Shown here piece after piece: positions 1-60,555 of a DNA stretch of 64,000 bases. The stretch is from Auanema rhodensis (taxonomy: Eukaryota > Animalia > Nematoda), in the NCBI GenBank assembly GCA_964057225.1, contig OZ059894.1:11718001-11782000 (forward strand), read 5' to 3'. Both the position numbers and the translations under genes were made by a program. Below the pieces are notes generated by a model. It saw only the letters and a program-made list of their open reading frames with translations. It made no database searches and was not told where the DNA came from. Each line of letters begins with the position of its first letter. Position 1 is the stretch's first letter.

Positions 1-152
1 TCGACCCGTGAGGTGGAGCTAGCAAGCCAGCATCTACCTCAAGTCTCAAAAATCGGTTAACCTTATTGTGAACCAATGGAACACATATCGAAGGTTAATT
101 CGATAAGAACGATTACTACACTTTGATCTTAGCCAAAAGGCCGAGAAGCGAT
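1..152 (-). ncRNA. U2: U2 snRNA (3' end cut by window edge)
   Basis: Reverse complement begins ATCGCTTCTCGGCCTTTTGGCTAAGATCAAAGTGTAGTA; Sm site ATTTTTG. Confidence 0.95.
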
Positions 153-594
153 ACAGCATAGCCATGAGTATCAAAGACATCAAGCAAATGTATCGTACTT
201 GTTACGAGTGCACTCTCTCATTTGAATATAAAAGTGTGGTTTGACAATCTTGACTGTACAGGTCATAAATGGCTCATATAAACTGTGGATTTACTCAACT
301 TTTGGACTTATTTTTTTCTTATTCGAAGCGCTGCACTTTTTTCTATTCTTTTTATTCAAATACTTGTATATAGTTTTATATGTACGGTTGCAAAGTTTCC
401 GAATATTTTATATATTTTTATACAATAATTAGGAGAAGGTTAATACAATGAAATCTCCCAACTTTACAGTGTTTGTATTGCTTACAGTATCTAGAACAAC
501 CACTCTTGTAATATTAGAGCACATATCAATCAACAACTTTTTCTAGTTATCAAAGCTTTTTTATTTCTTCAAGATATTTCAAATAAAATATAAA

Positions 595-713
595 AGCTTA
601 CGACACCCGGGATTCCCAAGCCGTCTCCGATCCAAGTACTAACCGGGCCCAACGTTGCTTGACTTGCCAGATCGGACGGGATGGCGTACTTTCAACGTGG
701 TATGGTCGTAAGC
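595..713 (-). rRNA. 5S: 5S rRNA
   Basis: Reverse complement GCTTACGACCATACCACGTTGAAAGTACGCCATCCCGTCCGATCTGGCAAGTCAAGC...AGTACTTGGATCGGAGAC...GTCGTAAGCT, 119 nt, followed by T-runs; nematode-like. Confidence 0.97.
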
Positions 714-954
714 AATGTTATATTCTTCATTATCAGTTATATCACTCTAAATCTTGTTGTTAATAGTTAGGACCACAAAGAAAACAACAGGAACAGTAAC
801 AAATGAAATGCCCAAACTTTACAGTGTTCGAGTTATTTACAGTATCTAAGACTACCTCTGTCGTGTTATTAGAGCAAACATTCGATTAACAACAACTTTT
901 TTTTAGTTATCAAAGCTTTTTTATTTCTTCAAAAAATTTCAAATAAAATATAAA

Positions 955-3692: not shown

Positions 3693-3726
<34 letters not shown>

Positions 3727-5653: not shown

Positions 5654-5795
5654 AATGTCATATTCTTCATTATCAGTTATATCACTCTAAATCTTGTTGT
5701 TAATAGATACGACCACAAAGAAAACAACAGGAACAGTAACAATAACAAAAAAAATTTTTTTTTCACCTATGTGTCTAAAGGTTAGCCATGTATCC

Positions 5796-5837
<42 letters not shown>

Positions 5838-7017
5838 ACAGTAAAAAGTCCAATCAAGAGAGAAATTTTTTCAACACATAGTTGTTTTTTTTTTAAATAT
5901 CATTGTTTTTCCTCATAACTCGGTTTAAACTCGTTCTAACCCGTTGAAATACGTCTAGAAAGTCTTTATAACATGCATATGTATGATAGAACTTCATATT
6001 TATTGTAATAGAAAATTTTATTTTCAGACGTCTTGGTTAACAATGATATGTTTTACCCCCTTATAATTTTTATCATAATGTTCCTTATACGGAACGCTCA
6101 ATGAAACTTGCTTCCAGAAAAATTTCTTTCTATTTTTTCTTCATATGTACGTAGATACTATAGAGAACTATGATAGAAAACTTTAACATTCACGAAATCA
6201 TCATTTCTCATTACGCTACGGAGGTTTAAAAAGCTGTGTTTTACCTTATAATAGACCGGAAAACCCTTGTGTTAAAACTGGACCGTTTTTACACATATAA
6301 AAATGTCCCGTATTCGGGACCCTAATGTAACTTTTGATTCCCTATATTTTTTTTCATGAAATTTACAATCTACTGTAGAAAGAAGAATTATTTTTATAAA
6401 AACTGTAAATTTTTGAAAAATGAAAACAAAACGAAAACAAAAACAACTTTTTTTTGAACATTTTCTCACACAAGGGTCCCCCCTTACCTACTTTTTTTCT
6501 CATTACTCGTTTCAACCTCATCCGATCACTCTGCAAACATGTTTAATCGTTCTAACTTGTTGAAATACGTCTTAAAAGTCTAAACAACATGCATATGCAT
6601 AATAGAAACCACCCGAATAGGCCCCCACGCACTAAACGAGATATATACATTACCAGTATAGTAATAGAACACATATTGAAGATTAATTCGATAAGAACAA
6701 TTTATTGACGTAGAGAATGTTTGTTCCGAAAAACTACAATATTAAACTATAAAAGTAACAAAAGCGTAGAGGCAGCAAAGACATGAATAAACATAAATGT
6801 AAATACAGAATTACCAGGTAGTACATAAGTATGACAAAAAATTATAAGAAAGCCATGAAAATAGAAGGTTTGTGAACAAATGAGAGGTACATCTTTGATC
6901 GTATAGTCATTTCTAAACCGTTCGTATGCTGCAGCATCGTCATAAGCGTCACTCAAGTTGAATTTCCATGTGTACTACACGATTTTCATTCTTATTGTTA
7001 CATTCTTTCCCTGAGGG

Positions 7018-7166
7018 AATGGGCCGTTCCCGCCAGCAGTGCAAGAGCGGGTCGACCCGTGAGGTGGAGCTAGCAAGCCAGCATCTACCTCAAGTCTCAA
7101 AAATCGGTTAACCTTATTGTGAACCAATGGAACACATATCGAAGGTTAATTCGATAAGAACGATTA
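7018..7166 (-). pseudogene. U2: U2 snRNA 3' part (nt 38-end), interrupted by retrotransposon copy 1
   Basis: U2 match stops at the element 3' junction. Confidence 0.92.
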
Positions 7167-10100
7167 ATGGTTTATTGGATAACTAATGTTATGAAACAAT
7201 AAATAACCAATAAAAAAGAGCCCAGAATCGGGGAGACGGTATTACCAGTACAACTTAAAACAACAAGTGATTAAAAAGTACAAAATAAAACACATTACCA
7301 ACAGAGGCTAAAACGACTCAAGAGTCGGGGGAGTGGGTTAAAAAAAGTAATGAATAACAAAAAAAATGAATAATAAAGCAGAACAGTGAAAAGTAAATAT
7401 CAAGTGCCGCTATGATCAAACAATTTGAGTGCCTACGGCAATGGTGTTAAAAATAAACAACAAAATACATGTACCAATGAAGGTCAGAAAGAGAGAAAGA
7501 AAAAAGACAAAAATAAGTAATACAAAAAGTAAAAAATATATTACAATCAAATCACAAACAAGTCAATGGATAATTTCTTCTTCATACTGCCTTACACCAG
7601 AAACATGTTCCACGTAGATATTCCTGGCCCACTTGATGGTATCGGCGACGACGAGCTTCTCCATTAGCCGGTTGTAGTGGCTGCTGATCTTGAGTGATCG
7701 GAGGGCTTGTACGTTGAGCGGGTCCATAGTTCCAAGCATTCCTACAACATACGCTTCTACACTAGTCTTATAACCAAGACATTGGTATTGGCTGGCTATG
7801 TCAGCATATTTCCTCTCCTTTATCATACGCGCGGCTATCATGGCTTGTCGGCGGTTTTCATAGCTCACTGTAACATCAACGATACTACAGTGTTTTGCGT
7901 CATGATCGACCACTACTATGTCAGGTCGGAGTGTACTATTAATGCCAGGAAGAGGCTGGTTAGTGTAAACTTCTCCGTTTTTAGGCTCTGGCAGGGCTTT
8001 GATAAGACGGTCCACGATGTTGTTGTGGCGGAGTTGGATTGCTCTCGTGTGAAAGTGGCAGTGTCCAAGAACATGTGCAGCAGTTTCGTTGGGGTAACTA
8101 CACCTGCGGCACTGTTTGTTTCCTTCTCCGTGTCTTCTACAGCCATTGAGCTGGAGAGTATTAAGTCGAGCCTTGTGGATGAATCGCCAATCAGCAAACC
8201 GTATGAAATCTCCCTTCGCCATAAAGTGATTGGACGCTTTGTTGAGCATTGTGACATCAAAGACTTTCCCTTGATCCGGTTTTTGAAGAAGGATCCGAAG
8301 GTCTTTCAGCCATAATGCACGTCGCAGGCTTCTGTGGCATAGTGAAGGTGTTAACAGTTGGTTGTTTAGATTGAGTTCTAAACCACTTTCGAGGCATGTC
8401 CAGTTAGCGTTGATGAGTTTCTTGAGTTGACGCATCGCTACTCTTACTCTAGTCCAGATGGAGGAAACATCAGATGTTTCGGTGTCGAAAATGCCATCAA
8501 CGGAACCGTTGTAATATGCAGCTGTCTCATCGTTACTGGCTTGACGTTTAATCCTTTTTGATGCTACTTTTATTGAGTCTTGATGCGCAATATCAGCTAC
8601 TACAAGATCAGATGACTTCAAAAGTTGGTAGGCATGAGTGACTTCACAGACGTCTGACAGGTGTTGGAGTCGAGAGAGACCAAGTCCGCCGTAGTTAGTT
8701 GGCAGGTAGATTGGTTCAGCACTGGCGTTTGGAGGATAGTGCATCCATCTACGGGCACAGCGTTTGAGTTCTTTGTCAAAGGCGACTAGTTTACTCTTTG
8801 GGACGTGGCCATTCGTCATATGAAAATTAAGGCAGGGCATCAGGAAGGTGCGTACTGCGTCAGCTTTCTGCCATTCAGCCAGTAAGGATTTGTCAATTTT
8901 TTCCAAGTGTTGACTCATGATATTCACTGTTGGAACCGCAGACTTATGTAAATGCATTCCAGTAGGGATTCCCAGGTGGGAGTAGCTGTCAAATTTGCTG
9001 AGAGCGGGTAGAAAGCAGCTCTGAAGCATGTATGAGGCTGTTGATATTTTCCCTTTGTCGATCGTCAAAGTGGCGCATTTCGCTGGTTTGAAGGTCAAGC
9101 CTGTGAAATTAGCCGCATTTGATGCTGCGTCCAACATTTTCTGTAGATCTTCTGATGATGAGGAGACCAGGGCAAGGTCATCGGCGTACGCTAGCACAGC
9201 GATGTTGTGATTGTGTAGCTTATAGCCTGTAGAGGTTTCCAAGATGGTTTTAATTAGAGGTTCAATGGCAAGGTTGAACAGGATCGGAGATAGTGGGGAT
9301 CCTTGTAACACACCTGCGTGAACTGGAATGGTCGAAGTGAGTCCGGAGCCTGTCTGGATTCTTGTAGAGGCATCTGTGTATAGAGCTCGTACTCGGGATA
9401 TTGAGGCTTCAGCCATTCCTGACCATCTTAGAACGTCTAGCAGAGTTTCGTGTGGCAGCGATCCAAAAGCGTTTGCGAGATCAAGCCAAGCAATTGCAAT
9501 TTTCTCACGTTTACGTTTAGCGTCTGCAATGGTACTTTGCAACAAAAAGTTGTGTTCCATGCATCCAGCTTTGGCCACAAAGCCCTTTTGGGAGGGAGAA
9601 AGTCTTTTTTCTGCTCTTGCCCATGTTAGCAGTCGATGCGTAAGACAAGCTGAGTACGTCTTACCAATTGTGCACGAAAGTGCTATTGGTCGCCAGTTGT
9701 TAATGTCAGCTTTATCACCTTTCTTATGGATGAGGACGGTGGTCGACTCTTTCCAGGAAAAAGGGATGTGTCCTAGCTTGTGTACGGTGTTAAATATCGC
9801 TGCTAATATGTGACCTCCTTGGTCAAATTTCTTCCAGTGCGAGTATCGAAGTCCATCAGCTCCTGGAGCCGTATCGCTGCAACGTCGTATGCGTTCCCAG
9901 ACTTCCAAAGGGGTGAAAACACCTTCTAATGGGTCGGTACTAGTTGGCAAATCCGGTCTGGTGACTGTGATGGGGAGGGCTGGGCCTTGACTGCTGTGAA
10001 CAGAAAGGAAGTGTTTTTCAACATCTGCAGATGGTATGGTGCAGGTTTCACTTTGTTCTCCGAGCAGTTGTCGAAAGGCTTTCTTCTTGTTGGCCCTCCA

Positions 10101-10893
10101 AAGCTTCTGGATCTTCATCGCCTGGGTTTTTTGGTCTTCCTCAGGTTGTGTGTGTGGTCGGCGCCTTTGTCGGAAGTTGGGAACTTTGATCATAATGTCA
10201 AGAGACTTTCTGATTGTGTCTACCAACTCTTCCAGGACCTGCTCGAGCTCACTTTTGCACACTACCTTTTTAATTCTATCCACCCAAATATTTTCAGAGT
10301 TTCTATTCGGATCAGGGTCGGCAAAAGATGGTTCTGTACTCGGAACCCTGATCTCGTTGAATATTTCACTCTCTCGCGGAAGGGGGGAAACTTCGGCCTC
10401 TGGGGACAAGTCCAGAATTGGGGCCTCAAATAAGCGTACCGTTGATGGAGATCCTTGTTCCTGTCCACTGGATGATGTTTCCTCCATTGTACGCTCCTCC
10501 ACGGGCGGGGTGGTCGTCCTTGTGCCTGGTGGGCGGGTGTTCCTGATCCTCCGCAATATAGGGCGGGAACTGGGCTCTCTCGGAGATAGAGGTGAGATCA
10601 CCACAGTTTCCTCTATGATGCGGAGGCATCCTTCAGCTTTTTTCTGATGGCTTTTAACGGCCTTCAGATTGCTGGTGAGGCCACAGGCACGGCACTCAAA
10701 TTCTACTCCGACCTCATGTTCTCTCCGAAGATGGCGGACGAGACCATTGTGGTCTGAGTAGGATCGCGGAATAGGAGCGCAGATTGAACAAGAAAAAGGG
10801 CTCTGAAGAGGCACCTTTAGCTTGTAAAGCCCTTGCTCCATCTCTAGCAGATCTAAAGACTTACGTAGTACAGTTGCAATATCGATTTAGCCA
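7167..10893 (-). mobile_element. Full-length U2-targeting non-LTR retrotransposon (RLE type, Utopia-like), copy 1
   Basis: Single RT/RLE ORF. The 3' end abuts U2 nt ~38-40 (AATAAACCAT|TAATCGTTCTT) and the 5' end is preceded by U2 nt 1-96. Same orientation as U2. U2 targeting by an RLE element matches the Utopia group. Confidence 0.93.
7563..10841 (-). CDS. Non-LTR retrotransposon polyprotein (zinc fingers, reverse transcriptase, CCHC knuckle, restriction-like endonuclease), 1092 aa
   Basis: N-terminal CSIC..H..H and CRAC..H..C fingers. RT motifs APGADG, WRPIAL, QKGF, LDLANAFGS, GVLQGSPLSP, YADDL. CRRC-x8-H-x4-C knuckle. RHN..RPD..D..KERKY endonuclease motif. Confidence 0.97.
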   Translation of the reverse strand: MEQGLYKLKVPLQSPFSCSICAPIPRSYSDHNGLVRHLRREHEVGVEFECRACGLTSNLKAVKSHQKKAEGCLRIIEETVVISPLSPREPSSRPILRRIRNTRPPGTRTTTPPVEERTMEETSSSGQEQGSPSTVRLFEAPILDLSPEAEVSPLPRESEIFNEIRVPSTEPSFADPDPNRNSENIWVDRIKKVVCKSELEQVLEELVDTIRKSLDIMIKVPNFRQRRRPHTQPEEDQKTQAMKIQKLWRANKKKAFRQLLGEQSETCTIPSADVEKHFLSVHSSQGPALPITVTRPDLPTSTDPLEGVFTPLEVWERIRRCSDTAPGADGLRYSHWKKFDQGGHILAAIFNTVHKLGHIPFSWKESTTVLIHKKGDKADINNWRPIALSCTIGKTYSACLTHRLLTWARAEKRLSPSQKGFVAKAGCMEHNFLLQSTIADAKRKREKIAIAWLDLANAFGSLPHETLLDVLRWSGMAEASISRVRALYTDASTRIQTGSGLTSTIPVHAGVLQGSPLSPILFNLAIEPLIKTILETSTGYKLHNHNIAVLAYADDLALVSSSSEDLQKMLDAASNAANFTGLTFKPAKCATLTIDKGKISTASYMLQSCFLPALSKFDSYSHLGIPTGMHLHKSAVPTVNIMSQHLEKIDKSLLAEWQKADAVRTFLMPCLNFHMTNGHVPKSKLVAFDKELKRCARRWMHYPPNASAEPIYLPTNYGGLGLSRLQHLSDVCEVTHAYQLLKSSDLVVADIAHQDSIKVASKRIKRQASNDETAAYYNGSVDGIFDTETSDVSSIWTRVRVAMRQLKKLINANWTCLESGLELNLNNQLLTPSLCHRSLRRALWLKDLRILLQKPDQGKVFDVTMLNKASNHFMAKGDFIRFADWRFIHKARLNTLQLNGCRRHGEGNKQCRRCSYPNETAAHVLGHCHFHTRAIQLRHNNIVDRLIKALPEPKNGEVYTNQPLPGINSTLRPDIVVVDHDAKHCSIVDVTVSYENRRQAMIAARMIKERKYADIASQYQCLGYKTSVEAYVVGMLGTMDPLNVQALRSLKISSHYNRLMEKLVVADTIKWARNIYVEHVSGVRQYEEEIIH

Positions 10894-10989
10894 TTAACCT
10901 TATTGTGAACCAATGGAACACATATCGAAGGTTAATTCGATAAGAACGATTACTACACTTTGATCTTAGCCAAAAGGCCGAGAAGCGAT
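10894..10989 (-). pseudogene. U2: U2 snRNA 5' part (nt 1-96) heading retrotransposon copy 1
   Basis: U2 match ends at GGTTAA, before the Sm site. Confidence 0.92.
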
Positions 10990-17042: not shown

Positions 17043-18222
17043 ACAGTAAAAAGTCCAATCAAGAGAGAAATTTTTTCAACACATAGTTGTTTTTTTTTAA
17101 AATATCATTGTTTTTCCTCATAACTCGGTTTAAACTCGTTCTAACCCGTTGAAATACGTCTAGAAAGTCTTTATAACATGCATATGTATGATAGAACTTC
17201 ATATTTATTGTAATAGAAAATTTTATTTTCAGACGTCTTGGTTAACAATGATATGTTTTACCCCCTTATAATTTTTATCATAATGTTCCTTATACGGAAC
17301 GCTCAATGAAACTTGCTTCCAGAAAAATTTCTTTCTATTTTTTCTTCATATGTACGTAGATACTATAGAGAACTATGATAGAAAACTTTAACATTCACGA
17401 AATCATCATTTCTCATTACGCTACGGAGGTTTAAAAAGCTGTGTTTTACCTTATAATAGACCGGAAAACCCTTGTGTTAAAACTGGACCGTTTTTACACA
17501 TATAAAAATGTCCCGTATTCGGGACCCTAATGTAACTTTTGATTCCCTATATTTTTTTTCATGAAATTTACAATCTACTGTAGAAAGAAGAATTATTTTT
17601 ATAAAAACTGTAAATTTTTGAAAAATGAAAACAAAACGAAAACAAAAACAACTTTTTTTTGAACATTTTCTCACACAAGGGTCCCCCCTTACCTACTTTT
17701 TTTCTCATTACTCGTTTCAACCTCATCCGATCACTCTGCAAACATGTTTAATCGTTCTAACTTGTTGAAATACGTCTTAAAAGTCTAAACAACATGCATA
17801 TGCATAATAGAAACCACCCGAATAGGCCCCCACGCACTAAACGAGATATATACATTACCAGTATAGTAATAGAACACATATTGAAGATTAATTCGATAAG
17901 AACAATTTATTGACGTAGAGAATGTTTGTTCCGAAAAACTACAATATTAAACTATAAAAGTAACAAAAGCGTAGAGGCAGCAAAGACATGAATAAACATA
18001 AATGTAAATACAGAATTACCAGGTAGTACATAAGTATGACAAAAAATTATAAGAAAGCCATGAAAATAGAAGGTTTGTGAACAAATGAGAGGTACATCTT
18101 TGATCGTATAGTCATTTCTAAACCGTTCGTATGCTGCAGCATCGTCATAAGCGTCACTCAAGTTGAATTTCCATGTGTACTACACGATTTTCATTCTTAT
18201 TGTTACATTCTTTCCCTGAGGG

Positions 18223-18370
18223 AATGGGCCGTTCCCGCCAGCAGTGCAAGAGCGGGTCGACCCGTGAGGTGGAGCTAGCAAGCCAGCATCTACCTCAAGT
18301 CTCAAAAATCGGTTAACCTTATTGTGAACCAATGGAACACATATCGAAGGTTAATTCGATAAGAACGATT
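18223..18370 (-). pseudogene. U2: U2 snRNA 3' part (nt 39-end), interrupted by family A element
   Basis: U2 match stops at the junction. Confidence 0.92.
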
Positions 18371-19157
18371 TATTGAAGTAGATAATGTTTGTCCCGGAGG
18401 ACTACAATATTAAAATAATTACTGAAGCCCGAAGGCAGCGAGAAATAGTAAGGATACTACCTGCACTGAGTGCGTCGTATCATAAAAAAAGAGATAGCTA
18501 ATGGGCAAGTTGAAGAGCTTGAAATTAACAATGACGTCACTAGAAGTAAAGTTTTCTATCTGCAGCTGCGGGTAAAGAGGGTCAGCGTAAGCAGAATTCA
18601 ATTCTACCAACAATTAGTGGGAACATTGAGAGAACAGATGAAGGAGGAAATTGTAACTTCAAGTAAAATAGATTATATCTTCAGCTGCGGGTAAAGAGAG
18701 TCAGCTTTGTACAGATTACTAGTTTACATAAGAAGTGGTAACATTTCAAAAAAGGAGCACAACATAAAAAACGAGACTACGGACTATGAGGTAAATGTTA
18801 TCATTGTCTGGATCGATGATTCGGCATTTGATTGCAGCTGCGGATTGAGTGGATCAGCTTGCATGGCGTCCGCATTCGACATCAGGGAAAATGATGAGTT
18901 TCTTGAGGTCCGGCTCGGCGGGCTGTTATGTCCTATTCCCTGTTGATGGTGTTGTTGTCCTTGAGCTTGTTCTTCTTCCCAGAAAAAAAAAACTGTGAAG
19001 CTGAAGAGTCCTATTAAACGTCTTTAAACGCAAGATTAATAAGAAGCTACTACAGCTAACACAGGACCGCCTCAAGGCCTGGTAGATCAACCAGTGTTGC
19101 TTCAATCACCAAGTATTGCGGCCTGGGCCCTTGGATCAATTCACAACACCAGTATAG
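18371..19157 (-). mobile_element. Non-autonomous U2-targeting short retroelement, family A (787 bp), copy 1
   Basis: Inserted at U2 nt 39/40, preceded by U2 nt 1-79 (41-bp duplication of nt 39-79). No long ORF. 3' terminus resembles that of the autonomous element. Confidence 0.85.
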
Positions 19158-19236
19158 CAATGGAACACATATCGAAGGTTAATTCGATAAGAACGATTAC
19201 TACACTTTGATCTTAGCCAAAAGGCCGAGAAGCGAT
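19158..19236 (-). pseudogene. U2: U2 snRNA 5' part (nt 1-79) heading family A element
   Basis: U2 match ends at CCATTG. Confidence 0.92.
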
Positions 19237-32774: not shown

Positions 32775-33954
32775 ACAGTAAAAAGTCCAATCAAGAGAGA
32801 AATTTTTTCAACACATAGTTGTTTTTTTTTTAAATATCATTGTTTTTCCTCATAACTCGGTTTAAACTCGTTCTAACCCGTTGAAATACGTCTAGAAAGT
32901 CTTTATAACATGCATATGTATGATAGAACTTCATATTTATTGTAATAGAAAATTTTATTTTCAGACGTCTTGGTTAACAATGATATGTTTTACCCCCTTA
33001 TAATTTTTATCATAATGTTCCTTATACGGAACGCTCAATGAAACTTGCTTCCAGAAAAATTTCTTTCTATTTTTTCTTCATATGTACGTAGATACTATAG
33101 AGAACTATGATAGAAAACTTTAACATTCACGAAATCATCATTTCTCATTACGCTACGGAGGTTTAAAAAGCTGTGTTTTACCTTATAATAGACCGGAAAA
33201 CCCTTGTGTTAAAACTGGACCGTTTTTACACATATAAAAATGTCCCGTATTCGGGACCCTAATGTAACTTTTGATTCCCTATATTTTTTTTCATGAAATT
33301 TACAATCTACTGTAGAAAGAAGAATTATTTTTATAAAAACTGTAAATTTTTGAAAAATGAAAACAAAACGAAAACAAAAACAACTTTTTTTTGAACATTT
33401 TCTCACACAAGGGTCCCCCCTTACCTACTTTTTTTCTCATTACTCGTTTCAACCTCATCCGATCACTCTGCAAACATGTTTAATCGTTCTAACTTGTTGA
33501 AATACGTCTTAAAAGTCTAAACAACATGCATATGCATAATAGAAACCACCCGAATAGGCCCCCACGCACTAAACGAGATATATACATTACCAGTATAGTA
33601 ATAGAACACATATTGAAGATTAATTCGATAAGAACAATTTATTGACGTAGAGAATGTTTGTTCCGAAAAACTACAATATTAAACTATAAAAGTAACAAAA
33701 GCGTAGAGGCAGCAAAGACATGAATAAACATAAATGTAAATACAGAATTACCAGGTAGTACATAAGTATGACAAAAAATTATAAGAAAGCCATGAAAATA
33801 GAAGGTTTGTGAACAAATGAGAGGTACATCTTTGATCGTATAGTCATTTCTAAACCGTTCGTATGCTGCAGCATCGTCATAAGCGTCACTCAAGTTGAAT
33901 TTCCATGTGTACTACACGATTTTCATTCTTATTGTTACATTCTTTCCCTGAGGG

Positions 33955-34102
33955 AATGGGCCGTTCCCGCCAGCAGTGCAAGAGCGGGTCGACCCGTGAG
34001 GTGGAGCTAGCAAGCCAGCATCTACCTCAAGTCTCAAAAATCGGTTAACCTTATTGTGAACCAATGGAACACATATCGAAGGTTAATTCGATAAGAACGA
34101 TT
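33955..34102 (-). pseudogene. U2: U2 snRNA 3' part (nt 39-end), interrupted by family A + retrotransposon stack
   Basis: U2 match stops at the junction. Confidence 0.92.
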
Positions 34103-34889
34103 TATTGAAGTAGATAATGTTTGTCCCGGAGGACTACAATATTAAAATAATTACTGAAGCCCGAAGGCAGCGAGAAATAGTAAGGATACTACCTGCACTG
34201 AGTGCGTCGTATCATAAAAAAAGAGATAGCTAATGGGCAAGTTGAAGAGCTTGAAATTAACAATGACGTCACTAGAAGTAAAGTTTTCTATCTGCAGCTG
34301 CGGGTAAAGAGGGTCAGCGTAAGCAGAATTCAATTCTACCAACAATTAGTGGGAACATTGAGAGAACAGATGAAGGAGGAAATTGTAACTTCAAGTAAAA
34401 TAGATTATATCTTCAGCTGCGGGTAAAGAGAGTCAGCTTTGTACAGATTACTAGTTTACATAAGAAGTGGTAACATTTCAAAAAAGGAGCACAACATAAA
34501 AAACGAGACTACGGACTATGAGGTAAATGTTATCATTGTCTGGATCGATGATTCGGCATTTGATTGCAGCTGCGGATTGAGTGGATCAGCTTGCATGGCG
34601 TCCGCATTCGACATCAGGGAAAATGATGAGTTTCTTGAGGTCCGGCTCGGCGGGCTGTTATGTCCTATTCCCTGTTGATGGTGTTGTTGTCCTTGAGCTT
34701 GTTCTTCTTCCCAGAAAAAAAAAACTGTGAAGCTGAAGAGTCCTATTAAACGTCTTTAAACGCAAGATTAATAAGAAGCTACTACAGCTAACACAGGACC
34801 GCCTCAAGGCCTGGTAGATCAACCAGTGTTGCTTCAATCACCAAGTATTGCGGCCTGGGCCCTTGGATCAATTCACAACACCAGTATAG
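34103..34889 (-). mobile_element. Non-autonomous U2-targeting short retroelement, family A, copy 2
   Basis: Appears identical to 18371..19157 by eye, with identical short ORFs in the track and the same junctions. Confidence 0.85.
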
Positions 34890-34931
34890 CAATGGAACAC
34901 ATATCGAAGGTTAATTCGATAAGAACGATTA
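34890..34931 (-). pseudogene. U2: U2 fragment (nt 38-79) between stacked elements
   Basis: caatggaacacatatcgaaggttaattcgataagaacgatta. Confidence 0.9.
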
Positions 34932-37900
34932 ATGGTTTATTGAATAACTAATGTTATGATACAATAAATAACCAATAAAAAAGAGCCCAGAATCGGGGAG
35001 ACGGTATTACCAGTACAACTTAAAACAGCAAGTAATTAAAAAGTACATAATAAGACACATTGCCAACAGAGGCTAAAACGACTCAAGAGTCGGGGGAGTG
35101 GGTTAAAAAAAAATGAACAAAAAAAATGAATATTAAAGCAGAACAATGAGAAATCAAGTGCCGCTATGATCAAACAATTTGAGTGCCTACGGCAATGATG
35201 TTAAAAATAAACAACAAAATACATGTACCAATGAAGGTCAGAAAGAAAGAAACAAAAGACAAAATAAGTAATACAAAAAGTAAATACATTACAATCAAAT
35301 CACAAACAAGTCAATTGATAATTTCTTCTTCATATTGCCTTACACCAGAAACATGTTCCACGTAGATATTCCTGGCCCACTTGATGGTATCGGCGACGAC
35401 GAGCTTCTCCATTAGCCGGTTGTAGTGGCTGCTGATCTTGAGTGATCGGAGGGCTTGTCCGTTGAGCGGGTCCATAGTTCCAAGCATTCCTACGACATAC
35501 GCTTCTACACTAGTCTTATAACCAAGACATTGGTATTGGCTGGCTATGTCAGCATATTTCCTCTCCTTTATCATACGCGCGGCTATCATGGCTTGACGGC
35601 GGTTTTCATAGCTCACTGTAACATCAACGATACTACAGTGTTTTGCGTCATGATCGACCACTACTATGTCAGGTCGGAGTGTACTATTAATGCCAGGAAG
35701 AGGCTGGTTAGTGTAAACTTCTCCGTTTTTAGGCTCTGGCAGGGCTTTGATAAGACGGTCCACGATGTTGTTGTGGCGGAGTTGGATTGCTCTCGTGTGA
35801 GAGTGGCAGTGTCCAAGAACATGTGCAGCAGTTTCGTTGGAGTAACTACACCTGCGGCACTGTTTGTTTCCTTCTCCGTGTCTTCTACAGCCATTGAGCT
35901 GGAGAGTATTGAGTCGAGCCTTGTGGATGAATCGCCAATCAGCAAACCGTATGAAATCTCCCTTCGCCATAAAGTGATTGGACGCTTTGTTGAGCATTGT
36001 GACATCAAAGACTTTCCCTTGATCCGGTTTTTGAAGAAGGATCCGAAGGTCTTTCAGCCATAATGCACGTCGCAGGCTTCTGTGGCATAGTGAAGGTGTT
36101 AACAGTTGGTTGTTTAGATTGAGTTCTAAACCACTTTCGAGGCATGTCCAGTTAGCGTTGATGAGTTTCTTGAGTTGACGCATCGCTACTCTTACTCTAG
36201 TCCAGATGGAGGAAACATCAGATGTTTCGGTGTCGAAAATGCCATCAACGGAACCGTTGTAATATGCAGCTGTCTCATCGTTACTGGCTTGACGTTTAAT
36301 CCTTTTTGATGCTACTTTTTTTGAGTCTTGATGCGCAATATCAGCTACTACAAGATCAGATGACTTCAAAAGTTGGTAGGCATGAGTGACTTCACAGACG
36401 TCTGACAGGTGTTGGAGTCGAGAGAGACCAAGTCCGCCGTAGTTAGTTGGCAGGTAGATTGGTTCAGCACTGGCGTTTGGAGGATAGTGCATCCATCTAC
36501 GGGCACAGCGTTTGAGTTCTTTGTCAAAGGCGACTAGTTTACTCTTTGGGACGTGGCCATTCGTCATATGAAAATTAAGGCAGGGCATCAGGAAGGTGCG
36601 TACTGCGTCAGCTTTCTGCCATTCAGCAAGTAAGGATTTGTCAATTTTTTCCAAGTGTTGACTCATAATATTCACTGTTGGAACCGCAGACTTATGTAAA
36701 TGCATTCCAGTAGGGATTCCCAGGTGGGAGTAGCTGTCAAATTTGCTAAGAGCGGGTAGAGAGGAGCTCTGTAGCATGTATGAGGCTGTTGATATTTTCC
36801 CTTTGTCGATCGTCAAGGTGGCGCATTTCGCTGGTTTGAAGGTCAAGCCTGTGAAATTAGCCGCATTTGATGCTGCGTCCAACATTTTCTGTAGATCTTC
36901 TGATGATGAGGAGACCAGGGCAAGGTCATCGGCGTACGCTAGCACAGCGATGTTGTGGTTGTGTAGCTTATAGCCTGTAGAGGTTTCCAAGATGGTTTTA
37001 ATTAGAGGTTCAATGGCAAGGTTGAACAGGATCGGAGATAGTGGGGATCCTTGTAACACACCTGCGTGAACTGGAATGGTCGAAGTGAGTCCGGAGCCTG
37101 TCTGGATTCTTGTAGAGGCATCTGTGTATAGAGCTCGTACTCGGGATATTGAGGCTTCAGCCATTCCTGACCATCTTAGAACGTCTAGCAGAGTTTCGTG
37201 TGGCAGCGATCCAAAAGCGTTTGCGAGATCAAGCCAAGCAATTGCAATTTTCTCACGTTTACGTTTAGCGTCCGCAATGGTACTTTGCAACATAAAGTTG
37301 TGTTCCATGCATCCAGCTTTGGCCACAAAGCCCTTTTGGGAGGGAGAAAGTCTTTTTTCTGCTCTTGCCCATGTTAGCAGTCGATGCGTAAGACAAGCTG
37401 AGTACGTCTTACCAATTGTGCACGAAAGTGCTATTGGTCGCCAGTTGTTAATGTCAGCTTTATCACCTTTCTTATGGATGAGGACGGTGGTCGACTCTTT
37501 CCAGGAAAAAGGGATGTGTCCTAGCTTGTGTACGGTGTTAAATATCGCTGCTAATATGTGACCTCCTTGGTCAAATTTCTTCCAGTGCGAGTATCGAAGT
37601 CCATCAGCTCCTGGAGCCGTATCGCTGCAACGTCGTATGCGTTCCCAGACTTCCAAAGGGGTGAAAACACCTTCTAGTGGGTCGGTACTAGCTGGCAAAT
37701 CCGGTCTGGTGACTGTGATGGGGAGGGCTGGGCCTTGACTGCTGTGAACAGAAAGGAAGTGTTTTTCAACCTCTGCAGATGGTATGGTGCAGGTTTCACT
37801 TTGTTCTCCGAGCAGTTGTCGAAAGGCTTTCTTCTTGTTGGCCCTCCAAAGCTTCTGGAGCTTCATCGCCTGGGTTTTTTGGTCTTCCTCAGGTTGTGTG

Positions 37901-38641
37901 TGTGGTCGGCGCCTTTGTCGGAAGTTGGGAACTTTGATCATAATGTCAAGAGACTTTCTGATTGTGTCTACCAACTCTTCCAGGACCTGCTCGAGCTCAC
38001 TTTTGCACACTACCTTTTTAATTCTATCCACCCAAATATTTTCAGAGTTTCTATTCGGATCAGGGTCGGCAAAAGATGGTTCTGTACTCGGAACCCTGAT
38101 CTCGTTGAATATTTCACTCTCTCGCGGAAGGGGGGAAACTTCGGCCTCTGGGGACAAGTCCAGAATTGGGGCCTCAAACAAGCGTACCGTTGATGGAGAT
38201 CCTTGTTCCTGTCCACTGGATGATGTTTCCTCCATTGTACGCTCCTCCACGGGCGGGGTGGTCGTCCTTGTGCCTGGTGGGCGGGTGTTCCTGATCCTCC
38301 GCAATATAGGGCGGGAACTGGGCTCTCTCGGAGATAGAGGTGAGATCACCACAGTTTCCTCTATGATGCGGAGACATCCTTCAGCTTTTTTCTGATGGCT
38401 TTTAACGGCCTTCAGATTGCTGGTGAGGCCACAGGCACGGCACTCAAATTCTACTCTGACCTCATGTTCTCTCCGAAGATGGCGGACGAGACCATTGTGG
38501 TCTGAGTAGGATCGCGGAATAGGAGCGCAGATTGAACACGAAAAAGGGCTCTGAAGAGGCACCTTTAGCTTGTAAAGCCCTTGCTCCATCTCTAGCAGAT
38601 CTAAAGACTTACGTAGTACAGTTGCAATATCGATTTAGCCA
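34932..38641 (-). mobile_element. Full-length U2-targeting non-LTR retrotransposon (Utopia-like), copy 2
   Basis: Same structure and same junction positions as copy 1. Inserted into the U2 head of a family-A short element. 3' UTR has indels relative to copy 1. Confidence 0.93.
35311..38589 (-). CDS. Non-LTR retrotransposon polyprotein (ZnF-RT-CCHC-RLE), 1092 aa
   Basis: Intact ORF with the same motifs as 7563..10841 and about a dozen amino-acid differences by eye. Confidence 0.97.
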   Translation of the reverse strand: MEQGLYKLKVPLQSPFSCSICAPIPRSYSDHNGLVRHLRREHEVRVEFECRACGLTSNLKAVKSHQKKAEGCLRIIEETVVISPLSPREPSSRPILRRIRNTRPPGTRTTTPPVEERTMEETSSSGQEQGSPSTVRLFEAPILDLSPEAEVSPLPRESEIFNEIRVPSTEPSFADPDPNRNSENIWVDRIKKVVCKSELEQVLEELVDTIRKSLDIMIKVPNFRQRRRPHTQPEEDQKTQAMKLQKLWRANKKKAFRQLLGEQSETCTIPSAEVEKHFLSVHSSQGPALPITVTRPDLPASTDPLEGVFTPLEVWERIRRCSDTAPGADGLRYSHWKKFDQGGHILAAIFNTVHKLGHIPFSWKESTTVLIHKKGDKADINNWRPIALSCTIGKTYSACLTHRLLTWARAEKRLSPSQKGFVAKAGCMEHNFMLQSTIADAKRKREKIAIAWLDLANAFGSLPHETLLDVLRWSGMAEASISRVRALYTDASTRIQTGSGLTSTIPVHAGVLQGSPLSPILFNLAIEPLIKTILETSTGYKLHNHNIAVLAYADDLALVSSSSEDLQKMLDAASNAANFTGLTFKPAKCATLTIDKGKISTASYMLQSSSLPALSKFDSYSHLGIPTGMHLHKSAVPTVNIMSQHLEKIDKSLLAEWQKADAVRTFLMPCLNFHMTNGHVPKSKLVAFDKELKRCARRWMHYPPNASAEPIYLPTNYGGLGLSRLQHLSDVCEVTHAYQLLKSSDLVVADIAHQDSKKVASKRIKRQASNDETAAYYNGSVDGIFDTETSDVSSIWTRVRVAMRQLKKLINANWTCLESGLELNLNNQLLTPSLCHRSLRRALWLKDLRILLQKPDQGKVFDVTMLNKASNHFMAKGDFIRFADWRFIHKARLNTLQLNGCRRHGEGNKQCRRCSYSNETAAHVLGHCHSHTRAIQLRHNNIVDRLIKALPEPKNGEVYTNQPLPGINSTLRPDIVVVDHDAKHCSIVDVTVSYENRRQAMIAARMIKERKYADIASQYQCLGYKTSVEAYVVGMLGTMDPLNGQALRSLKISSHYNRLMEKLVVADTIKWARNIYVEHVSGVRQYEEEIIN

Positions 38642-38737
38642 TTAACCTTATTGTGAACCAATGGAACACATATCGAAGGTTAATTCGATAAGAACGATTA
38701 CTACACTTTGATCTTAGCCAAAAGGCCGAGAAGCGAT
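38642..38737 (-). pseudogene. U2: U2 snRNA 5' part (nt 1-96) without its upstream flank, heading retrotransposon copy 2
   Basis: Match ends exactly at U2 +1; the normal upstream flank is absent. Confidence 0.92.
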
Positions 38738-39591
38738 CGAGCGATGATAGAAAACTTTAACATTCACGAAATCATCATTTCTCATTACGCTACGGAGGTT
38801 TAAAAAGCTGTGTTTTACCTTATAATAGACCGGAAAACCCTTGTGTTAAAACTGGACCGTTTTTACACATATAAAAATGTCCCGTATTCGGGACCCTAAT
38901 GTAACTTTTGATTCCCTATATTTTTTTTCATGAAATTTACAATCTACTGTAGAAAGAAGAATTATTTTTATAAAAACTGTAAATTTTTGAAAAATGAAAA
39001 CAAAACGAAAACAAAAACAACTTTTTTTTGAACATTTTCTCACACAAGGGTCCCCCCTTACCTACTTTTTTTCTCATTACTCGTTTCAACCTCATCCGAT
39101 CACTCTGCAAACATGTTTAATCGTTCTAACTTGTTGAAATACGTCTTAAAAGTCTAAACAACATGCATATGCATAATAGAAACCACCCGAATAGGCCCCC
39201 ACGCACTAAACGAGATATATACATTACCAGTATAGTAATAGAACACATATTGAAGATTAATTCGATAAGAACAATTTATTGACGTAGAGAATGTTTGTTC
39301 CGAAAAACTACAATATTAAACTATAAAAGTAACAAAAGCGTAGAGGCAGCAAAGACATGAATAAACATAAATGTAAATACAGAATTACCAGGTAGTACAT
39401 AAGTATGACAAAAAATTATAAGAAAGCCATGAAAATAGAAGGTTTGTGAACAAATGAGAGGTACATCTTTGATCGTATAGTCATTTCTAAACCGTTCGTA
39501 TGCTGCAGCATCGTCATAAGCGTCACTCAAGTTGAATTTCCATGTGTACTACACGATTTTCATTCTTATTGTTACATTCTTTCCCTGAGGG

Positions 39592-39777
39592 AATGGGCCG
39601 TTCCCGCCAGCAGTGCAAGAGCGGGTCGACCCGTGAGGTGGAGCTAGCAAGCCAGCATCTACCTCAAGTCTCAAAAATCGGTTAACCTTATTGTGAACCA
39701 ATGGAACACATATCGAAGGTTAATTCGATAAGAACGATTACTACACTTTGATCTTAGCCAAAAGGCCGAGAAGCGAT
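39592..39777 (-). ncRNA. U2: U2 snRNA
   Basis: Array copy. Confidence 0.96.
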
Positions 39778-40898: not shown

Positions 40899-42078
40899 AC
40901 AGTAAAAAGTCCAATCAAGAGAGAAATTTTTTCAACACATAGTTGTTTTTTTTTTAAATATCATTGTTTTTCCTCATAACTCGGTTTAAACTCGTTCTAA
41001 CCCGTTGAAATACGTCTAGAAAGTCTTTATAACATGCATATGTATGATAGAACTTCATATTTATTGTAATAGAAAATTTTATTTTCAGACGTCTTGGTTA
41101 ACAATGATATGTTTTACCCCCTTATAATTTTTATCATAATGTTCCTTATACGGAACGCTCAATGAAACTTGCTTCCAGAAAAATTTCTTTCTATTTTTTC
41201 TTCATATGTACGTAGATACTATAGAGAACTATGATAGAAAACTTTAACATTCACGAAATCATCATTTCTCATTACGCTACGGAGGTTTAAAAAGCTGTGT
41301 TTTACCTTATAATAGACCGGAAAACCCTTGTGTTAAAACTGGACCGTTTTTACACATATAAAAATGTCCCGTATTCGGGACCCTAATGTAACTTTTGATT
41401 CCCTATATTTTTTTTCATGAAATTTACAATCTACTGTAGAAAGAAGAATTATTTTTATAAAAACTGTAAATTTTTGAAAAATGAAAACAAAACGAAAACA
41501 AAAACAACTTTTTTTTGAACATTTTCTCACACAAGGGTCCCCCCTTACCTACTTTTTTTCTCATTACTCGTTTCAACCTCATCCGATCACTCTGCAAACA
41601 TGTTTAATCGTTCTAACTTGTTGAAATACGTCTTAAAAGTCTAAACAACATGCATATGCATAATAGAAACCACCCGAATAGGCCCCCACGCACTAAACGA
41701 GATATATACATTACCAGTATAGTAATAGAACACATATTGAAGATTAATTCGATAAGAACAATTTATTGACGTAGAGAATGTTTGTTCCGAAAAACTACAA
41801 TATTAAACTATAAAAGTAACAAAAGCGTAGAGGCAGCAAAGACATGAATAAACATAAATGTAAATACAGAATTACCAGGTAGTACATAAGTATGACAAAA
41901 AATTATAAGAAAGCCATGAAAATAGAAGGTTTGTGAACAAATGAGAGGTACATCTTTGATCGTATAGTCATTTCTAAACCGTTCGTATGCTGCAGCATCG
42001 TCATAAGCGTCACTCAAGTTGAATTTCCATGTGTACTACACGATTTTCATTCTTATTGTTACATTCTTTCCCTGAGGG

Positions 42079-42226
42079 AATGGGCCGTTCCCGCCAGCAG
42101 TGCAAGAGCGGGTCGACCCGTGAGGTGGAGCTAGCAAGCCAGCATCTACCTCAAGTCTCAAAAATCGGTTAACCTTATTGTGAACCAATGGAACACATAT
42201 CGAAGGTTAATTCGATAAGAACGATT
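42079..42226 (-). pseudogene. U2: U2 snRNA 3' part (nt 39-end), interrupted by family B element
   Basis: U2 match stops at the junction. Confidence 0.92.
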
Positions 42227-43091
42227 TATTGAAGTAGGAAATGTTTTGCCCCGTAGGACTACAAGTAAATATTATCTAGCACAAGGCTATTAGAGAATGA
42301 TAAGATACTACCTGCACTAAGTGCGTCGCATCGTAAAGGGAAAAAAAATTAAACAATGGGAGTTTAACAGCATGAAATTGAGAGAAAAGACATATCCGAG
42401 TGTGAATAAAATTACGGGTGAACGGAACATGGAGTACGAGAGACATACAAAACGAGACTAAGTGAAAAGAAAAAGTCTTGTATCACGTTCATGAAGGTTC
42501 GACGGATCCGGTAAGAAGCTGCGGGTTCAGAAGGTCAGCTTTCATCTCGTAGTCGTGGCGCATCAGGAATTTGTGAAGCTTTCCGGCTTTGCAGACGGCT
42601 GTATTGGTCCTCGTAGGATGGTGGAAGATGTTGTCGCTTAGTGATGTTACACATAAAGATATGCAAAAATAGAACAATTCAAAGAAAAAGAGCACAATTA
42701 AAACGAGATTTGGAGAGAAGAGAAGTCTTATATCACTTTCGATGGTTCGGAAGCTCCAGTCTGCTGCTGCGGTTTAGGGGGTGCAACTGGCATGTCGGAG
42801 GCGTAGCACATCATAGGTCAAGCTTGCTGGACTCCCGGCTCGGCTGGTGGCTGTGAGTTTTCCTTGTGCTTGTTCTCGGTGGTGGTCCCTGGGCTGTCTC
42901 TTCACCAAAAATTACTATACTAATTGCACATTTCATTTAAACGACCCATTTCAGAAGCTTTAAGAGGAAAAGCTACAATTAGCATAGGACCGCCTCAAGG
43001 CCTGGTGGATCATTCAATTTAGTTTCAATCGCCAAGTATAGCGGCCTGGGCCCTTGGGTCAATTCACTGAACCAGTGTAGTATCGATTGTT
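42227..43091 (-). mobile_element. Non-autonomous U2-targeting short retroelement, family B (865 bp)
   Basis: Same insertion site and same U2 nt 1-79 head as family A. Clearly homologous 5' and 3' terminal blocks with a diverged interior. Confidence 0.85.
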
Positions 43092-43170
43092 CAATGGAAC
43101 ACATATCGAAGGTTAATTCGATAAGAACGATTACTACACTTTGATCTTAGCCAAAAGGCCGAGAAGCGAT
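43092..43170 (-). pseudogene. U2: U2 snRNA 5' part (nt 1-79) heading family B element
   Basis: U2 match ends at CCATTG. Confidence 0.92.
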
Positions 43171-51687: not shown

Positions 51688-52384
51688 CAGTCCTGTGCGA
51701 AATAGTTGGGACACTCACTAGAATCCCTTATACCTTCTCAGACAAACTACAAAAAATCAGAAAAAATATATTTTGAGTGTTAAAAAATGATAATGAACTT
51801 AGAAAAAATTTAAAAAAATCAAAAAATTATGTTTAAAAGTATTTTCCGGAGTCTCCGAAATTTTCATAAACTGCTTGAAGTCTTCTTTTTTGAATTTCAG
51901 AAGTTTCATCAAGACTTCAGAAACAATTTTTTTATAGAATGTTAGGAGTACACTAAACGTCATTTTTTCTTTTGAACGGGAGAATTTGGTTGTATGTTAA
52001 CCAAGTTATCTTCATAGATATTCAGTAAGATTCAGATGCTGAAGCTTACTTGTTTGAAGCTATGCCATAGGAAAAACTTAGTTATTGATTGAGCTTTGTG
52101 CTAAGAATCATTTTAGAATATTTTTTAATGAATTAACATGTTCCTAATCTCAAATTTTGTTAAATCAAAAGGGATTATTCAAAATAGTTAAAAAACACTA
52201 AATTTCCTTATAAATTTAGAAAACAATATTGAAATCAGTTTTAGTTATATTAACATATATTTTGACTGAATATAAACTATATGAACTCGCAAAATTTTTG
52301 AAATTAAAAAAAAATTTTTTTTGTAGTTTGAAGGGGTTTTCTGGGGCCTCTAACATAGGGGTGTCCCAACTATTTCGCACAGGA

Positions 52385-52387
<3 letters not shown>
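51688..52387. mobile_element. 700-bp MITE, Tc1/mariner-type, copy 1
   Basis: Perfect 27-bp TIR CAGTCCTGTGCGAAATAGTTGGGACAC, flanked by TA inside the (TA)n tract. Subterminal inverted CAAACTACAAAAAA. AT-rich, no transposase. Confidence 0.92.

Positions 52388-52422
<35 letters not shown>

Positions 52423-60517: not shown

Positions 60518-60520
<3 letters not shown>
59821..60520. mobile_element. 700-bp MITE, Tc1/mariner-type, copy 2
   Basis: Same sequence, TIRs and position in the (TA)n tract as copy 1. Confidence 0.92.

Positions 60521-60555
<35 letters not shown>

What the first reader, a model, noticed from the sequence alone, without database searches (positions are those of the whole stretch)
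38731..38760. Aberrant 5' junction ends exactly at U2 +1: likely footprint of the RNA template
Seen: upstream of retrotransposon copy 2 the U2 match stops precisely at +1 (38737). Six non-matching bases follow (cgagcg, 38738-38743), then sequence resumes in the spacer at the equivalent of unit-1 position 1596. About 1.44 kb is missing, including the U2 upstream region, both 5S genes and the (TA)n tract. On the sense strand the junction reads ...TATC-ATCGCT-CG-ATCGCTTCTC, i.e. the first six U2 bases appear twice, and G replaces the normal T at -1. Inference: cDNA ran to the capped 5' end of a U2-initiated chimeric RNA (the extra G possibly cap-templated), re-engaged the RNA end, and joined upstream DNA through AT microhomology. 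This implies the element is transcribed from the U2 promoter and that this copy has lost its promoter.
Basis: partly seen in the sequence, partly recalled or inferred. Interest (0 to 1): 0.82.

Follow-up and report, generated by a model that had tools for sequence, protein, structure and literature searches.

The report
Retrotransposon junction marking U2 transcription start
A jumping gene that lives inside U2 snRNA genes has one copy whose upstream edge sits exactly on the first base of U2 next to a 1.4-kb deletion, and three other independent copies show the same pattern, which suggests the element is copied from an RNA that starts at the U2 gene's own transcription start.

Summary
At 38642-38737 (- strand) U2 nt 1-96 ends exactly at +1. 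Six unmatched bases follow, and the array unit resumes 1429 bp further on. The U2 promoter region, both 5S genes and the (TA)n tract are missing.

The element is a Utopia-type restriction-like-endonuclease non-LTR retrotransposon with a 1092-aa ORF, inserted at U2 nt 38/39.

I examined 30 full-length 5' ends from the same 1.2-Mb array, plus 200 kb of array edge. Three more independent copies have upstream deletions of about 1.1, 1.6 and 2.0 kb. Their fixed edge is U2 nt 1 or 2, and each has a different spacer breakpoint and a different element haplotype. None of 43 uninterrupted U2 genes has such a junction.

Copies truncated at the 5' end abut U2 nt 20, 37/38 or 39 with no duplication. Full-length copies that landed in a short element's 79-nt U2 head still carry nt 1-96. 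So U2 1-96 is an element-borne head, not a target-site duplication.

Best reading: the RNA starts at U2 +1, and failed homology-guided 5' joining gave end-joined deletions.

The cap-derived G and the "re-engagement" detail are not reproduced in the other junctions. First readers had already flagged a sibling junction (L012) in the adjacent window of this genome.

The parts
38744..39587 (-). Upstream flank of copy 2. It is array spacer (reference unit 1620-2463), 100% identical to the reference, and is followed by an intact U2 gene at 39588-39777.
38738..38743 (-). 6-nt filler at the aberrant 5' junction. It matches neither flank. Four of its bases plus the spacer's terminal AT repeat U2 nt 1-6.
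38642..38737 (-). U2 head of the full-length element: U2 nt 1-96, ending just before the Sm site. 38737 is U2 +1.
34932..38641 (-). Body of full-length Utopia-type element, copy 2 (about 3.71 kb). It has an AATAAA motif a few bases before its 3' end.
35311..38589 (-). Intact ORF of 1092 aa. It has an N-terminal C2H2 zinc finger, an RVT_1 reverse transcriptase domain (aa 371-593), a C-terminal CCHC motif and a PD..D restriction-like endonuclease motif.
34890..34931 (-). U2 nt 38/39-79. This is the remainder of the 79-nt head of the short element into which the full-length element inserted.
34103..34889 (-). Short non-autonomous element S1 (787 bp), 100% identical to the solo copy at 18371-19157.
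33951..34102 (-). U2 nt 39-190, the 3' flank of the composite insertion.
7014..10989 (-). Copy 1, for comparison. It runs: canonical promoter, U2 1-96 (10894-10989), full-length body (7167-10893, ORF 7563-10841), then U2 38-190 (7014-7166).
18219..19236 (-). Solo short element S1 with its own U2 1-79 head (19158-19236) and 3' flank U2 39-190 (18219-18370). A second variant, S2, lies at 42075-43170.

Best explanation
Proposed mechanism, with each step marked as shown or inferred.

1. The window is part of a roughly 1.2-Mb tandem array of 2.46-kb units (U2 snRNA plus two 5S rRNA genes) colonised by a Utopia-type RLE non-LTR retrotransposon. The element nicks U2 at nt 38/39. (Shown.)

2. Full-length elements carry U2 nt 1-96 as part of the element. 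This 'head' stops just before the Sm site. (Shown.)

3. Donor copies sit behind intact U2 promoters and are transcribed from U2 +1. (Inferred.)

4. After target-primed reverse transcription, the cDNA ends in the complement of U2 1-96. Normally its last 38 nt find the target's own U2 1-38 and give a seamless junction, as in the R2 model. (Inferred.)

5. In copy 2 the full-length element landed in the 79-nt head of a resident short element. The upstream DNA end was lost or resected, and the complete cDNA end was joined by end joining to spacer DNA 1429 bp upstream, with a 6-nt filler. (Structure shown; order of events inferred.)

6. The product is a coding-intact element that keeps its head from +1 but has lost the U2 promoter, both 5S genes and the (TA)n tract. 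(Shown.)
For: Coordinates of the junction.

Family: RT domain plus CCHC and PD..D motifs. The 3' flank always starts at U2 nt 38/39, which is the Utopia site (PMC4640811). A scorpion homologue is also followed by U2 from about nt 39.

Head, not target-site duplication:
- 5'-truncated copies abut U2 nt 20, 37/38, 39 or 2 behind a canonical promoter, with no nt 39-96.
- Two full-length copies sitting upstream of an S head (nt 38/39-79) still carry nt 1-96. These are window copy 2 and C1:11,063,615-11,069,884.

The +1 edge:
- Of 21 full-length heads seen, 16 have the canonical promoter and 5 have deletions (4 events).
- The spacer breakpoints in sense coordinates are 844, 1176, 285 and 711. U2 starts at nt 1, 2/3, 2 and 1. 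Microhomology is 0-2 nt or there is filler.
- The four copies belong to four different haplotype groups, and three of those groups also contain canonical-promoter copies; the L012 group's only other member, L021, sits behind a short element.
- All 43 uninterrupted U2 genes have canonical upstream sequence.

No ribozyme or other Rfam family was found in the leader, so nothing detected by Rfam predicts 5' processing.
Against: - There is no RNA evidence at all.
- The junction could not be checked in reads.
- snRNA-type Pol II promoters normally make short transcripts, so a 3.8-kb product would be unusual.
- Two other aberrant copies have edges at nt 38 (L003) and nt 34 (L026), so not every rearrangement marks +1.
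- The array is homogenised by duplication, so copy counts overstate the number of events. I counted L028 and L030 as one.
Confidence: 0.78

Rival explanations
1. An ordinary DNA-level deletion in the array (replication slippage, end joining after a random break, or unequal exchange) that happens to end at U2 +1 and has nothing to do with retrotransposition.
For: The array shows other rearrangements. One unit has lost a 5S repeat (4903-7013), there are inverted segments (L026, L029, L030), and copy 2's composite structure could also arise by unequal exchange between U2 39-79 repeats.
Against: Four independent deletions share the same 1-2-nt right-hand edge but have four different left-hand edges, and all four lie in front of full-length heads. 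None lies in front of the 43 uninterrupted U2 genes. If edges fell at random within the 96-nt head, four of six aberrant edges landing in the first 3 nt would have a probability of about 1e-5 (own arithmetic).
Confidence: 0.04
2. The edge is set by the endonuclease, not by the RNA. Top-strand cleavage near U2 +1 would be followed by one-sided resection of the upstream end.
For: In Phytophthora, Utopia insertions lack U2 1-38 upstream. Kojima and Jurka suggested a top-strand cut upstream of the nick. L003 has an edge at nt 38, i.e. at the nick site, so endonuclease-defined edges may exist.
Against: Truncated insertions retain target U2 up to nt 20, 37/38 and 39, so the top strand is not cut at +1 here. 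Uninterrupted U2 genes would be cut equally, yet none shows the deletion. Perfect preservation of one end alongside 1-2 kb lost from the other is not how a free double-strand break behaves.
Confidence: 0.06
3. The head is added anew at each event by template switching from the element RNA to mature U2 snRNA, as in L1/U6 chimeras. On this reading +1 marks the 5' end of U2 snRNA, not of an element transcript.
For: R2-type reverse transcriptases do jump between templates (PMC12203849). snRNA heads on SINEU elements were ascribed to template switching (PMC4494074).
Against: The U2/body joint is invariant. It is at nt 96 in all 21 full-length heads and at nt 79 in all 6 S heads. Fresh switches give variable joints. 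In addition, 16 full-length heads lie exactly behind canonical promoters.
Confidence: 0.07
4. Assembly artefact: a mis-join or collapse in a long tandem array.
For: Arrays of 1.2 Mb are hard to assemble, and no read check was possible.
Against: A mis-join between near-identical units would occur within homology. It would not occur at a non-homologous point with a 6-nt filler. Flanks are 100% identical to reference units right up to the joint. The L028 junction occurs twice in the assembly. Public runs of the same organism hold 0.8 of the sampled words of 38300-39200, though this does not single out the joint.
Confidence: 0.05

Closest known systems
Utopia (U2 snRNA gene-specific RLE non-LTR retrotransposons; Kojima & Jurka 2015, PMC4640811)
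   Same: Single ORF with RT and a C-terminal CCHC plus PD..D endonuclease motif. The 3' flank begins at U2 nt 39. 5' boundaries are variable, tandem insertions occur, and the elements live in U2 arrays. Nematodes and arthropods are listed hosts.
   Different: The paper treats extra U2 sequence at the 5' side as target-site duplication (0 bp in arthropods, 20 bp in reptiles) or as deletion. It does not discuss a promoter or a transcription start; the word 'promoter' does not occur in it. Here the 58 extra nt belong to the element, and the outer edge of the head maps to U2 +1.
R2 (28S rDNA-specific RLE element)
   Same: No promoter of its own. It is expressed as a co-transcript of the host gene. 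Upstream host sequence on the RNA can guide a precise 5' junction. 5' truncations and upstream target deletions occur. (Co-transcription: PMC12203849; the rest is my own knowledge of work from the Eickbush laboratory.)
   Different: R2 rides on a Pol I transcript and frees its 5' end with an HDV-like ribozyme. Here no ribozyme was detected, and the 5' end appears to be the host gene's own Pol II snRNA-type start.
SLACS / CZAR / CRE elements in trypanosomatid spliced-leader RNA genes
   Same: RLE elements inserted a few nucleotides into a small Pol II RNA gene and reported to be transcribed from that gene's +1. This is from my own knowledge and was not verified in the papers read here.
   Different: A different clade, host gene and kingdom. 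Their head is only about 11 nt. No deletion-junction evidence of this kind is known to me.
L1 5'-junction biology (microhomology end joining, target deletions, extra G from the cap)
   Same: Full-length cDNA ends are joined to resected upstream DNA with 0-2 nt of microhomology or filler, together with kilobase target deletions (own knowledge).
   Different: L1 uses an APE endonuclease and an internal promoter. An extra G is frequent in L1 but is seen in only one of four junctions here.
SINEU (SINEs with U1/U2-derived heads; Kojima 2015, PMC4494074)
   Same: Retroelements whose 5' part is a U2 fragment. How they are transcribed is stated to be an open question.
   Different: SINEU are dispersed crocodilian SINEs mobilised by Tx1-type elements. 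They do not reside behind U2 promoters.

Membership tests
Utopia | Non-LTR element with a reverse transcriptase domain | tested here: met
   RVT_1 at aa 371-593, E = 6e-28.
Utopia | C-terminal restriction-like endonuclease (CCHC motif plus PD..D/ExK), and no APE domain | tested here: met
   The translation shows a C-x2-C...H-x3-C motif followed by RPD, 14 residues, then D. Pfam finds no Exo_endo_phos domain. The motifs were read by eye, not by a profile.
Utopia | Insertion in U2 snRNA genes with the 3' flank starting at U2 nt 39 | tested here: met
   Every 3' junction examined continues with U2 nt 38/39-190 or nt 38/39 of a head.
Utopia | RT groups with Utopia in a phylogeny | tested here: inconclusive
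   No Repbase Utopia sequences were available. The best named relatives come from nematodes, Centruroides and Dendroctonus ponderosae; nematodes and D. ponderosae are on the Utopia host list. One Centruroides homologue (38% identity, 99% coverage) is flanked by U2 fragments, with U2 from about nt 39 at its 3' side.
Host-promoter-driven site-specific RLE element (the R2 / SLACS strategy) | Element RNA starts at or is processed from the host gene transcript | tested here: inconclusive
   Indirect evidence only: four independent cDNA-end junctions at U2 nt 1-2. No RNA data were available.
Host-promoter-driven site-specific RLE element (the R2 / SLACS strategy) | Self-cleaving (HDV-like) ribozyme at the 5' end, as in R2 | tested here: not met
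   No Rfam family other than U2 was found in the whole window at gathering score, or in 38200-38704 at E up to 10. A divergent ribozyme could be missed.
Target-site duplication (58 bp) as the origin of U2 39-96 | All insertions, truncated ones included, are flanked upstream by U2 up to nt 96, and the duplicated segment copies whatever lies downstream of the nick | tested here: not met
   Truncated copies end at nt 20, 37/38 or 39. Full-length copies in S heads carry nt 80-96, which the target lacked.

The most novel reading that the evidence does not exclude
In this nematode a protein-coding retrotransposon is expressed as a 3.8-kb RNA from an snRNA-type Pol II promoter. Its inherited U2 head (nt 1-96 for the autonomous element, nt 1-79 for its short parasites) would do three jobs. 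It places the element behind the promoter. It supplies the 38-nt homology that makes 5' junctions seamless. And because it stops just short of the Sm site, it keeps the RNA out of the snRNP maturation path, so the RNA can stay m7G-capped and be translated. On this reading, 'target-site duplications' reported for other Utopia families would be heads too.
Probability: 0.4. Interest if true: 0.7.

Novelty: new variant of a known kind. Interest (0 to 1): 0.6.

Why it matters
How Utopia elements are expressed has not been described. The founding paper does not mention a promoter. A set of deletion junctions that all stop at the host gene's first base gives a DNA-only map of the template RNA's 5' end, and it points to hijacking of a U2 snRNA promoter.

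This extends the 'ride on the host gene's transcript' strategy of R2 (Pol I plus ribozyme) and SLACS (spliced-leader gene) to an snRNA gene in an animal. It also reinterprets apparent target-site duplications as element-borne heads.

The junctions show that failed 5' resolution removes 1-2 kb of the array, including 5S genes, so the element is an active source of array erosion.

Site-specific RLE elements are being developed as gene-insertion tools. How the RNA's 5' homology decides between clean and deleterious junctions is directly relevant to that work.

Tried and rejected
- **Raw-read test.** From then on no letters of 38705-38741 were sent to any search tool. I worked beside them (for example the Rfam scan of 38200-38704) or locally on data already fetched.
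- **Fetching the whole array.** I did not try other routes. As a result, 10 of the 40 full-length 5' ends listed got no locus; two of these lie inside the 200 kb fetched, so 8 remain unexamined, plus those not scored.
- **Cap-derived extra G as a general signature.** Rejected. It is seen only in this copy. In L012 the G is spacer-templated, L027 has a T run and L028 has none.
- **58-bp target-site duplication.** Rejected (see membership test).
- **Relatives as a test of head architecture.** A soil-metagenome contig of the closest homologue (55% identity) shows no U2 flank. Two other contigs had no DNA on hand. The Dendroctonus locus shows no U2 match. The Centruroides copy has U2 nt 18 to about 60 upstream and U2 from about nt 39 downstream, i.e. 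a head or duplication of about 20 nt that does not start at +1.
- **SLACS literature check.** The papers read did not state the start site, so that comparison rests on my memory.

Full report
**Setting**

The window is G000:C1:11,718,001-11,782,000 of a 181-Mb eukaryotic assembly. The window is filled with a tandem array of 2.46-kb units, each holding one U2 snRNA gene and two 5S rRNA genes, all on the - strand.

I use a reference unit (window 2440-4902) and a sense coordinate p_s = 2464 minus the unit position. U2 nt n then lies at p_s 2273+n.

**The observation**

- U2 model position 1 lies at 38737.
- Window 38642-38737 is U2 nt 96..1 at 100% identity.
- Window 38738-38743 matches nothing.
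- Window 38744-39587 is unit 1620-2463 (p_s 844..1) at 100% identity.

So 1429 bp of the unit are missing: the whole U2 upstream region, both 5S genes and the (TA)n tract. The small differences in numbers come from counting on another unit with a longer (TA)n tract.

**What the element is**

Both long insertions in the window carry an intact 1092-aa ORF (35311-38589 and 7563-10841, - strand). The ORF has:
- an N-terminal C2H2 zinc finger;
- an RVT_1 domain;
- a C-terminal CCHC motif and a PD..D motif.

Every 3' junction continues with U2 from nt 38/39. That is the defining site of Utopia, the U2-specific RLE non-LTR lineage (PMC4640811).

The closest proteins are metagenomic (55% identity). 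The closest named relatives come from nematodes, the scorpion Centruroides and Dendroctonus ponderosae. One Centruroides homologue is flanked by U2 fragments, with U2 from about nt 39 at its 3' side.

**Structure of copy 2**

Copy 2 is a composite. In sense order it reads:
1. spacer;
2. 6-nt filler;
3. U2 1-96;
4. full-length body (3.71 kb);
5. U2 38/39-79;
6. a 787-bp short element (S1);
7. U2 39-190.

Solo short elements have the form U2 1-79 / S / U2 39-190 (18219-19236 and 42075-43170).

**U2 39-96 is part of the element, not a target-site duplication**

Two lines of evidence support this.

First, 5'-truncated copies in the 200 kb I could fetch (C1:10.90-11.10 Mb), and one in L009, abut target U2 at nt 20, 37/38, 39 or 2 behind a canonical promoter, or abut more distant spacer. 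None has nt 39-96.

Second, two full-length copies sit upstream of an S head that only reaches nt 79, yet both carry nt 1-96. These are window copy 2 and C1:11,063,615-11,069,884. A staggered cut would instead have duplicated nt 39-79 plus 17 nt of S.

Each family therefore carries its own U2 'head': nt 1-96 for the autonomous element and nt 1-79 for S. Both stop before the Sm site at about nt 99-107.

A search of the genome with the first 202 nt of the body found at least 40 copies, all in C1:10.94-12.15 Mb. Thirty of them came with 1.5-kb flanks:

| Class | Loci | Count |
|---|---|---|
| Canonical promoter plus U2 1-96 | L002, L005, L007, L008, L010, L011, L013, L016-L018, L020, L022-L025 | 15 |
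| Behind another element, as X / U2 38/39-96 / full-length | L004, L006, L009, L014, L015, L019, L021, L029 | 8 |
| Aberrant | L001, L003, L012, L026, L027, L028, L030 | 7 |

Five of the seven aberrant loci, representing four events, are upstream deletions whose fixed edge is the start of U2:

| Locus | Spacer breakpoint (p_s) | Joint | U2 starts at | Deletion |
|---|---|---|---|---|
| L001 (this finding) | 844 | 6-nt filler | nt 1 | 1429 bp |
| L012 | 1176 | 1-nt microhomology | nt 2/3 | about 1.1 kb |
| L027 | 285 | T-run filler | nt 2 | about 2.0 kb |
| L028 and L030 (same joint, opposite orientations) | 711 | 2-nt AT microhomology | nt 1 | about 1.6 kb |

The four copies belong to four different sequence groups of the element. 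Three of these groups also contain canonical-promoter copies; the L012 group's only other member, L021, sits behind a short element. The events are therefore independent.

The other two aberrant loci have different edges. L003 has its edge at nt 38, the nick site, with a 14-nt AT-rich filler. L026 has an inverted element fragment joined at nt 34.

In a census of all 72 U2 5' parts in about 350 kb:
- the 43 uninterrupted U2 genes all have canonical upstream sequence;
- the 6 S heads all have canonical upstream sequence;
- only full-length heads show the +1-edged deletions.

**Mechanism**

The pattern is a fixed right edge at the first one or two bases of the U2 transcript, variable left edges 1-2 kb upstream, 0-2 nt of microhomology or short filler, and exclusive association with the element. 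This is the signature of a complete cDNA end joined to resected upstream DNA. It places the 5' end of the template RNA at U2 +1.

Sixteen full-length heads in the census lie directly behind intact U2 promoters. No ribozyme or other Rfam family is detectable in the leader. The simplest source of such an RNA is therefore initiation at the U2 promoter.

I infer that the first 38 nt of the head normally pair with the target's own U2 1-38 and give seamless junctions, by analogy with R2 (PMC12203849, and my own knowledge). The deletions would be the failures of that step.

Truncated copies that keep target U2 to nt 20-39 exclude a top-strand cut at +1 as the cause of the edge.

**What is not supported**

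- The untemplated G at -1 occurs only in this copy.
- The repeat of U2 nt 1-6 in the filler rests on four bases. The AT microhomology of L028 makes the reading attractive, but templated filler from end joining would look the same.
- There is no RNA evidence.

**Limits**

**Comparison and verdict**

The element is a Utopia. The strategy resembles R2 (host co-transcript) and, from memory, SLACS/CZAR (start at +1 of the spliced-leader gene). The junction biology resembles L1 5' end joining.

Three things appear to be new:
- the host promoter is an snRNA-type Pol II promoter;
- the U2 head is inherited by the element and is family-specific;
- the RNA start can be read from a set of deletion junctions.

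I rate it a new variant of a known kind, with interest 0.6 and confidence 0.78 in the main reading.

Noticed in passing
window 51688-52391 and 59821-60524; also C1:10,908,878-10,909,200 (87% identity): A 704-bp insertion in the array spacer is flanked by a 10-bp duplication of unit 1257-1266. It is present in two units 8133 bp apart, probably through array duplication. It is a different, unidentified mobile element.
   Followed up: partly
L003 (C1:11,387,245-11,390,446), locus 1428-1500: A full-length copy, 100% identical over 1.7 kb to window copy 2, has its upstream deletion edge at U2 nt 38, the endonuclease nick site. It has a 14-nt AT-rich filler and a spacer breakpoint only 52 bp from that of copy 2. 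It may record cleavage of a head without insertion, followed by end joining.
   Followed up: partly
L026 (C1:11,298,268-11,301,469), locus 1-1500: An inverted fragment of the element body (nt 2447 to 998, antisense) is joined to U2 nt 34-96 of a full-length copy with about 13 nt of overlap. This could be a 5' inversion or a palindromic rearrangement.
   Followed up: no
L028 / L030 and L029 (C1:11.249-11.283 Mb): The same aberrant junction occurs on both strands 32 kb apart. Several copies between 11.22 and 11.30 Mb are on the + strand. The array therefore contains a large inverted duplication.
   Followed up: no
window 4903-7013: One array unit has only one 5S gene, from a deletion between the two 360-bp 5S repeats. 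The same variant occurs at C1:11,024,945-11,027,055 and 11,039,357-11,041,471, and in L024 and L025.
   Followed up: partly
L004 locus 524-1441; L014 locus 700-1442: The short elements are diverse. One is an S1 5' part fused to the last 179 nt of the autonomous element. L014 holds a third variant, only 83-90% identical to S1 and S2. All share a ...CAATAAA 3' terminus with the autonomous element, as expected for parasites of its reverse transcriptase.
   Followed up: partly
window 38629-38641 (first 12 nt of the element body): The body begins with a near-copy of U2 nt 18-28, with one base missing. This may be a relic of how the head was first acquired. Other first-reader notes describe anti-U2 tracts in the leader.
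   Followed up: no
C1:11,024,894-11,024,944 (truncated copy T4) and reference unit p_s 34-41: Every unit carries, just downstream of the U2 3' end, an 8-nt copy of U2 nt 31-38. One truncated element is joined exactly there. This fits either a 2.26-kb deletion mediated by that homology or the use of a fossil target.
   Followed up: no
C1:10,900,001-11,100,000 (L031-L050): The left edge of the array is broken into unit fragments interleaved with tens of kb of unrelated sequence. Truncated elements are enriched there.
   Followed up: partly
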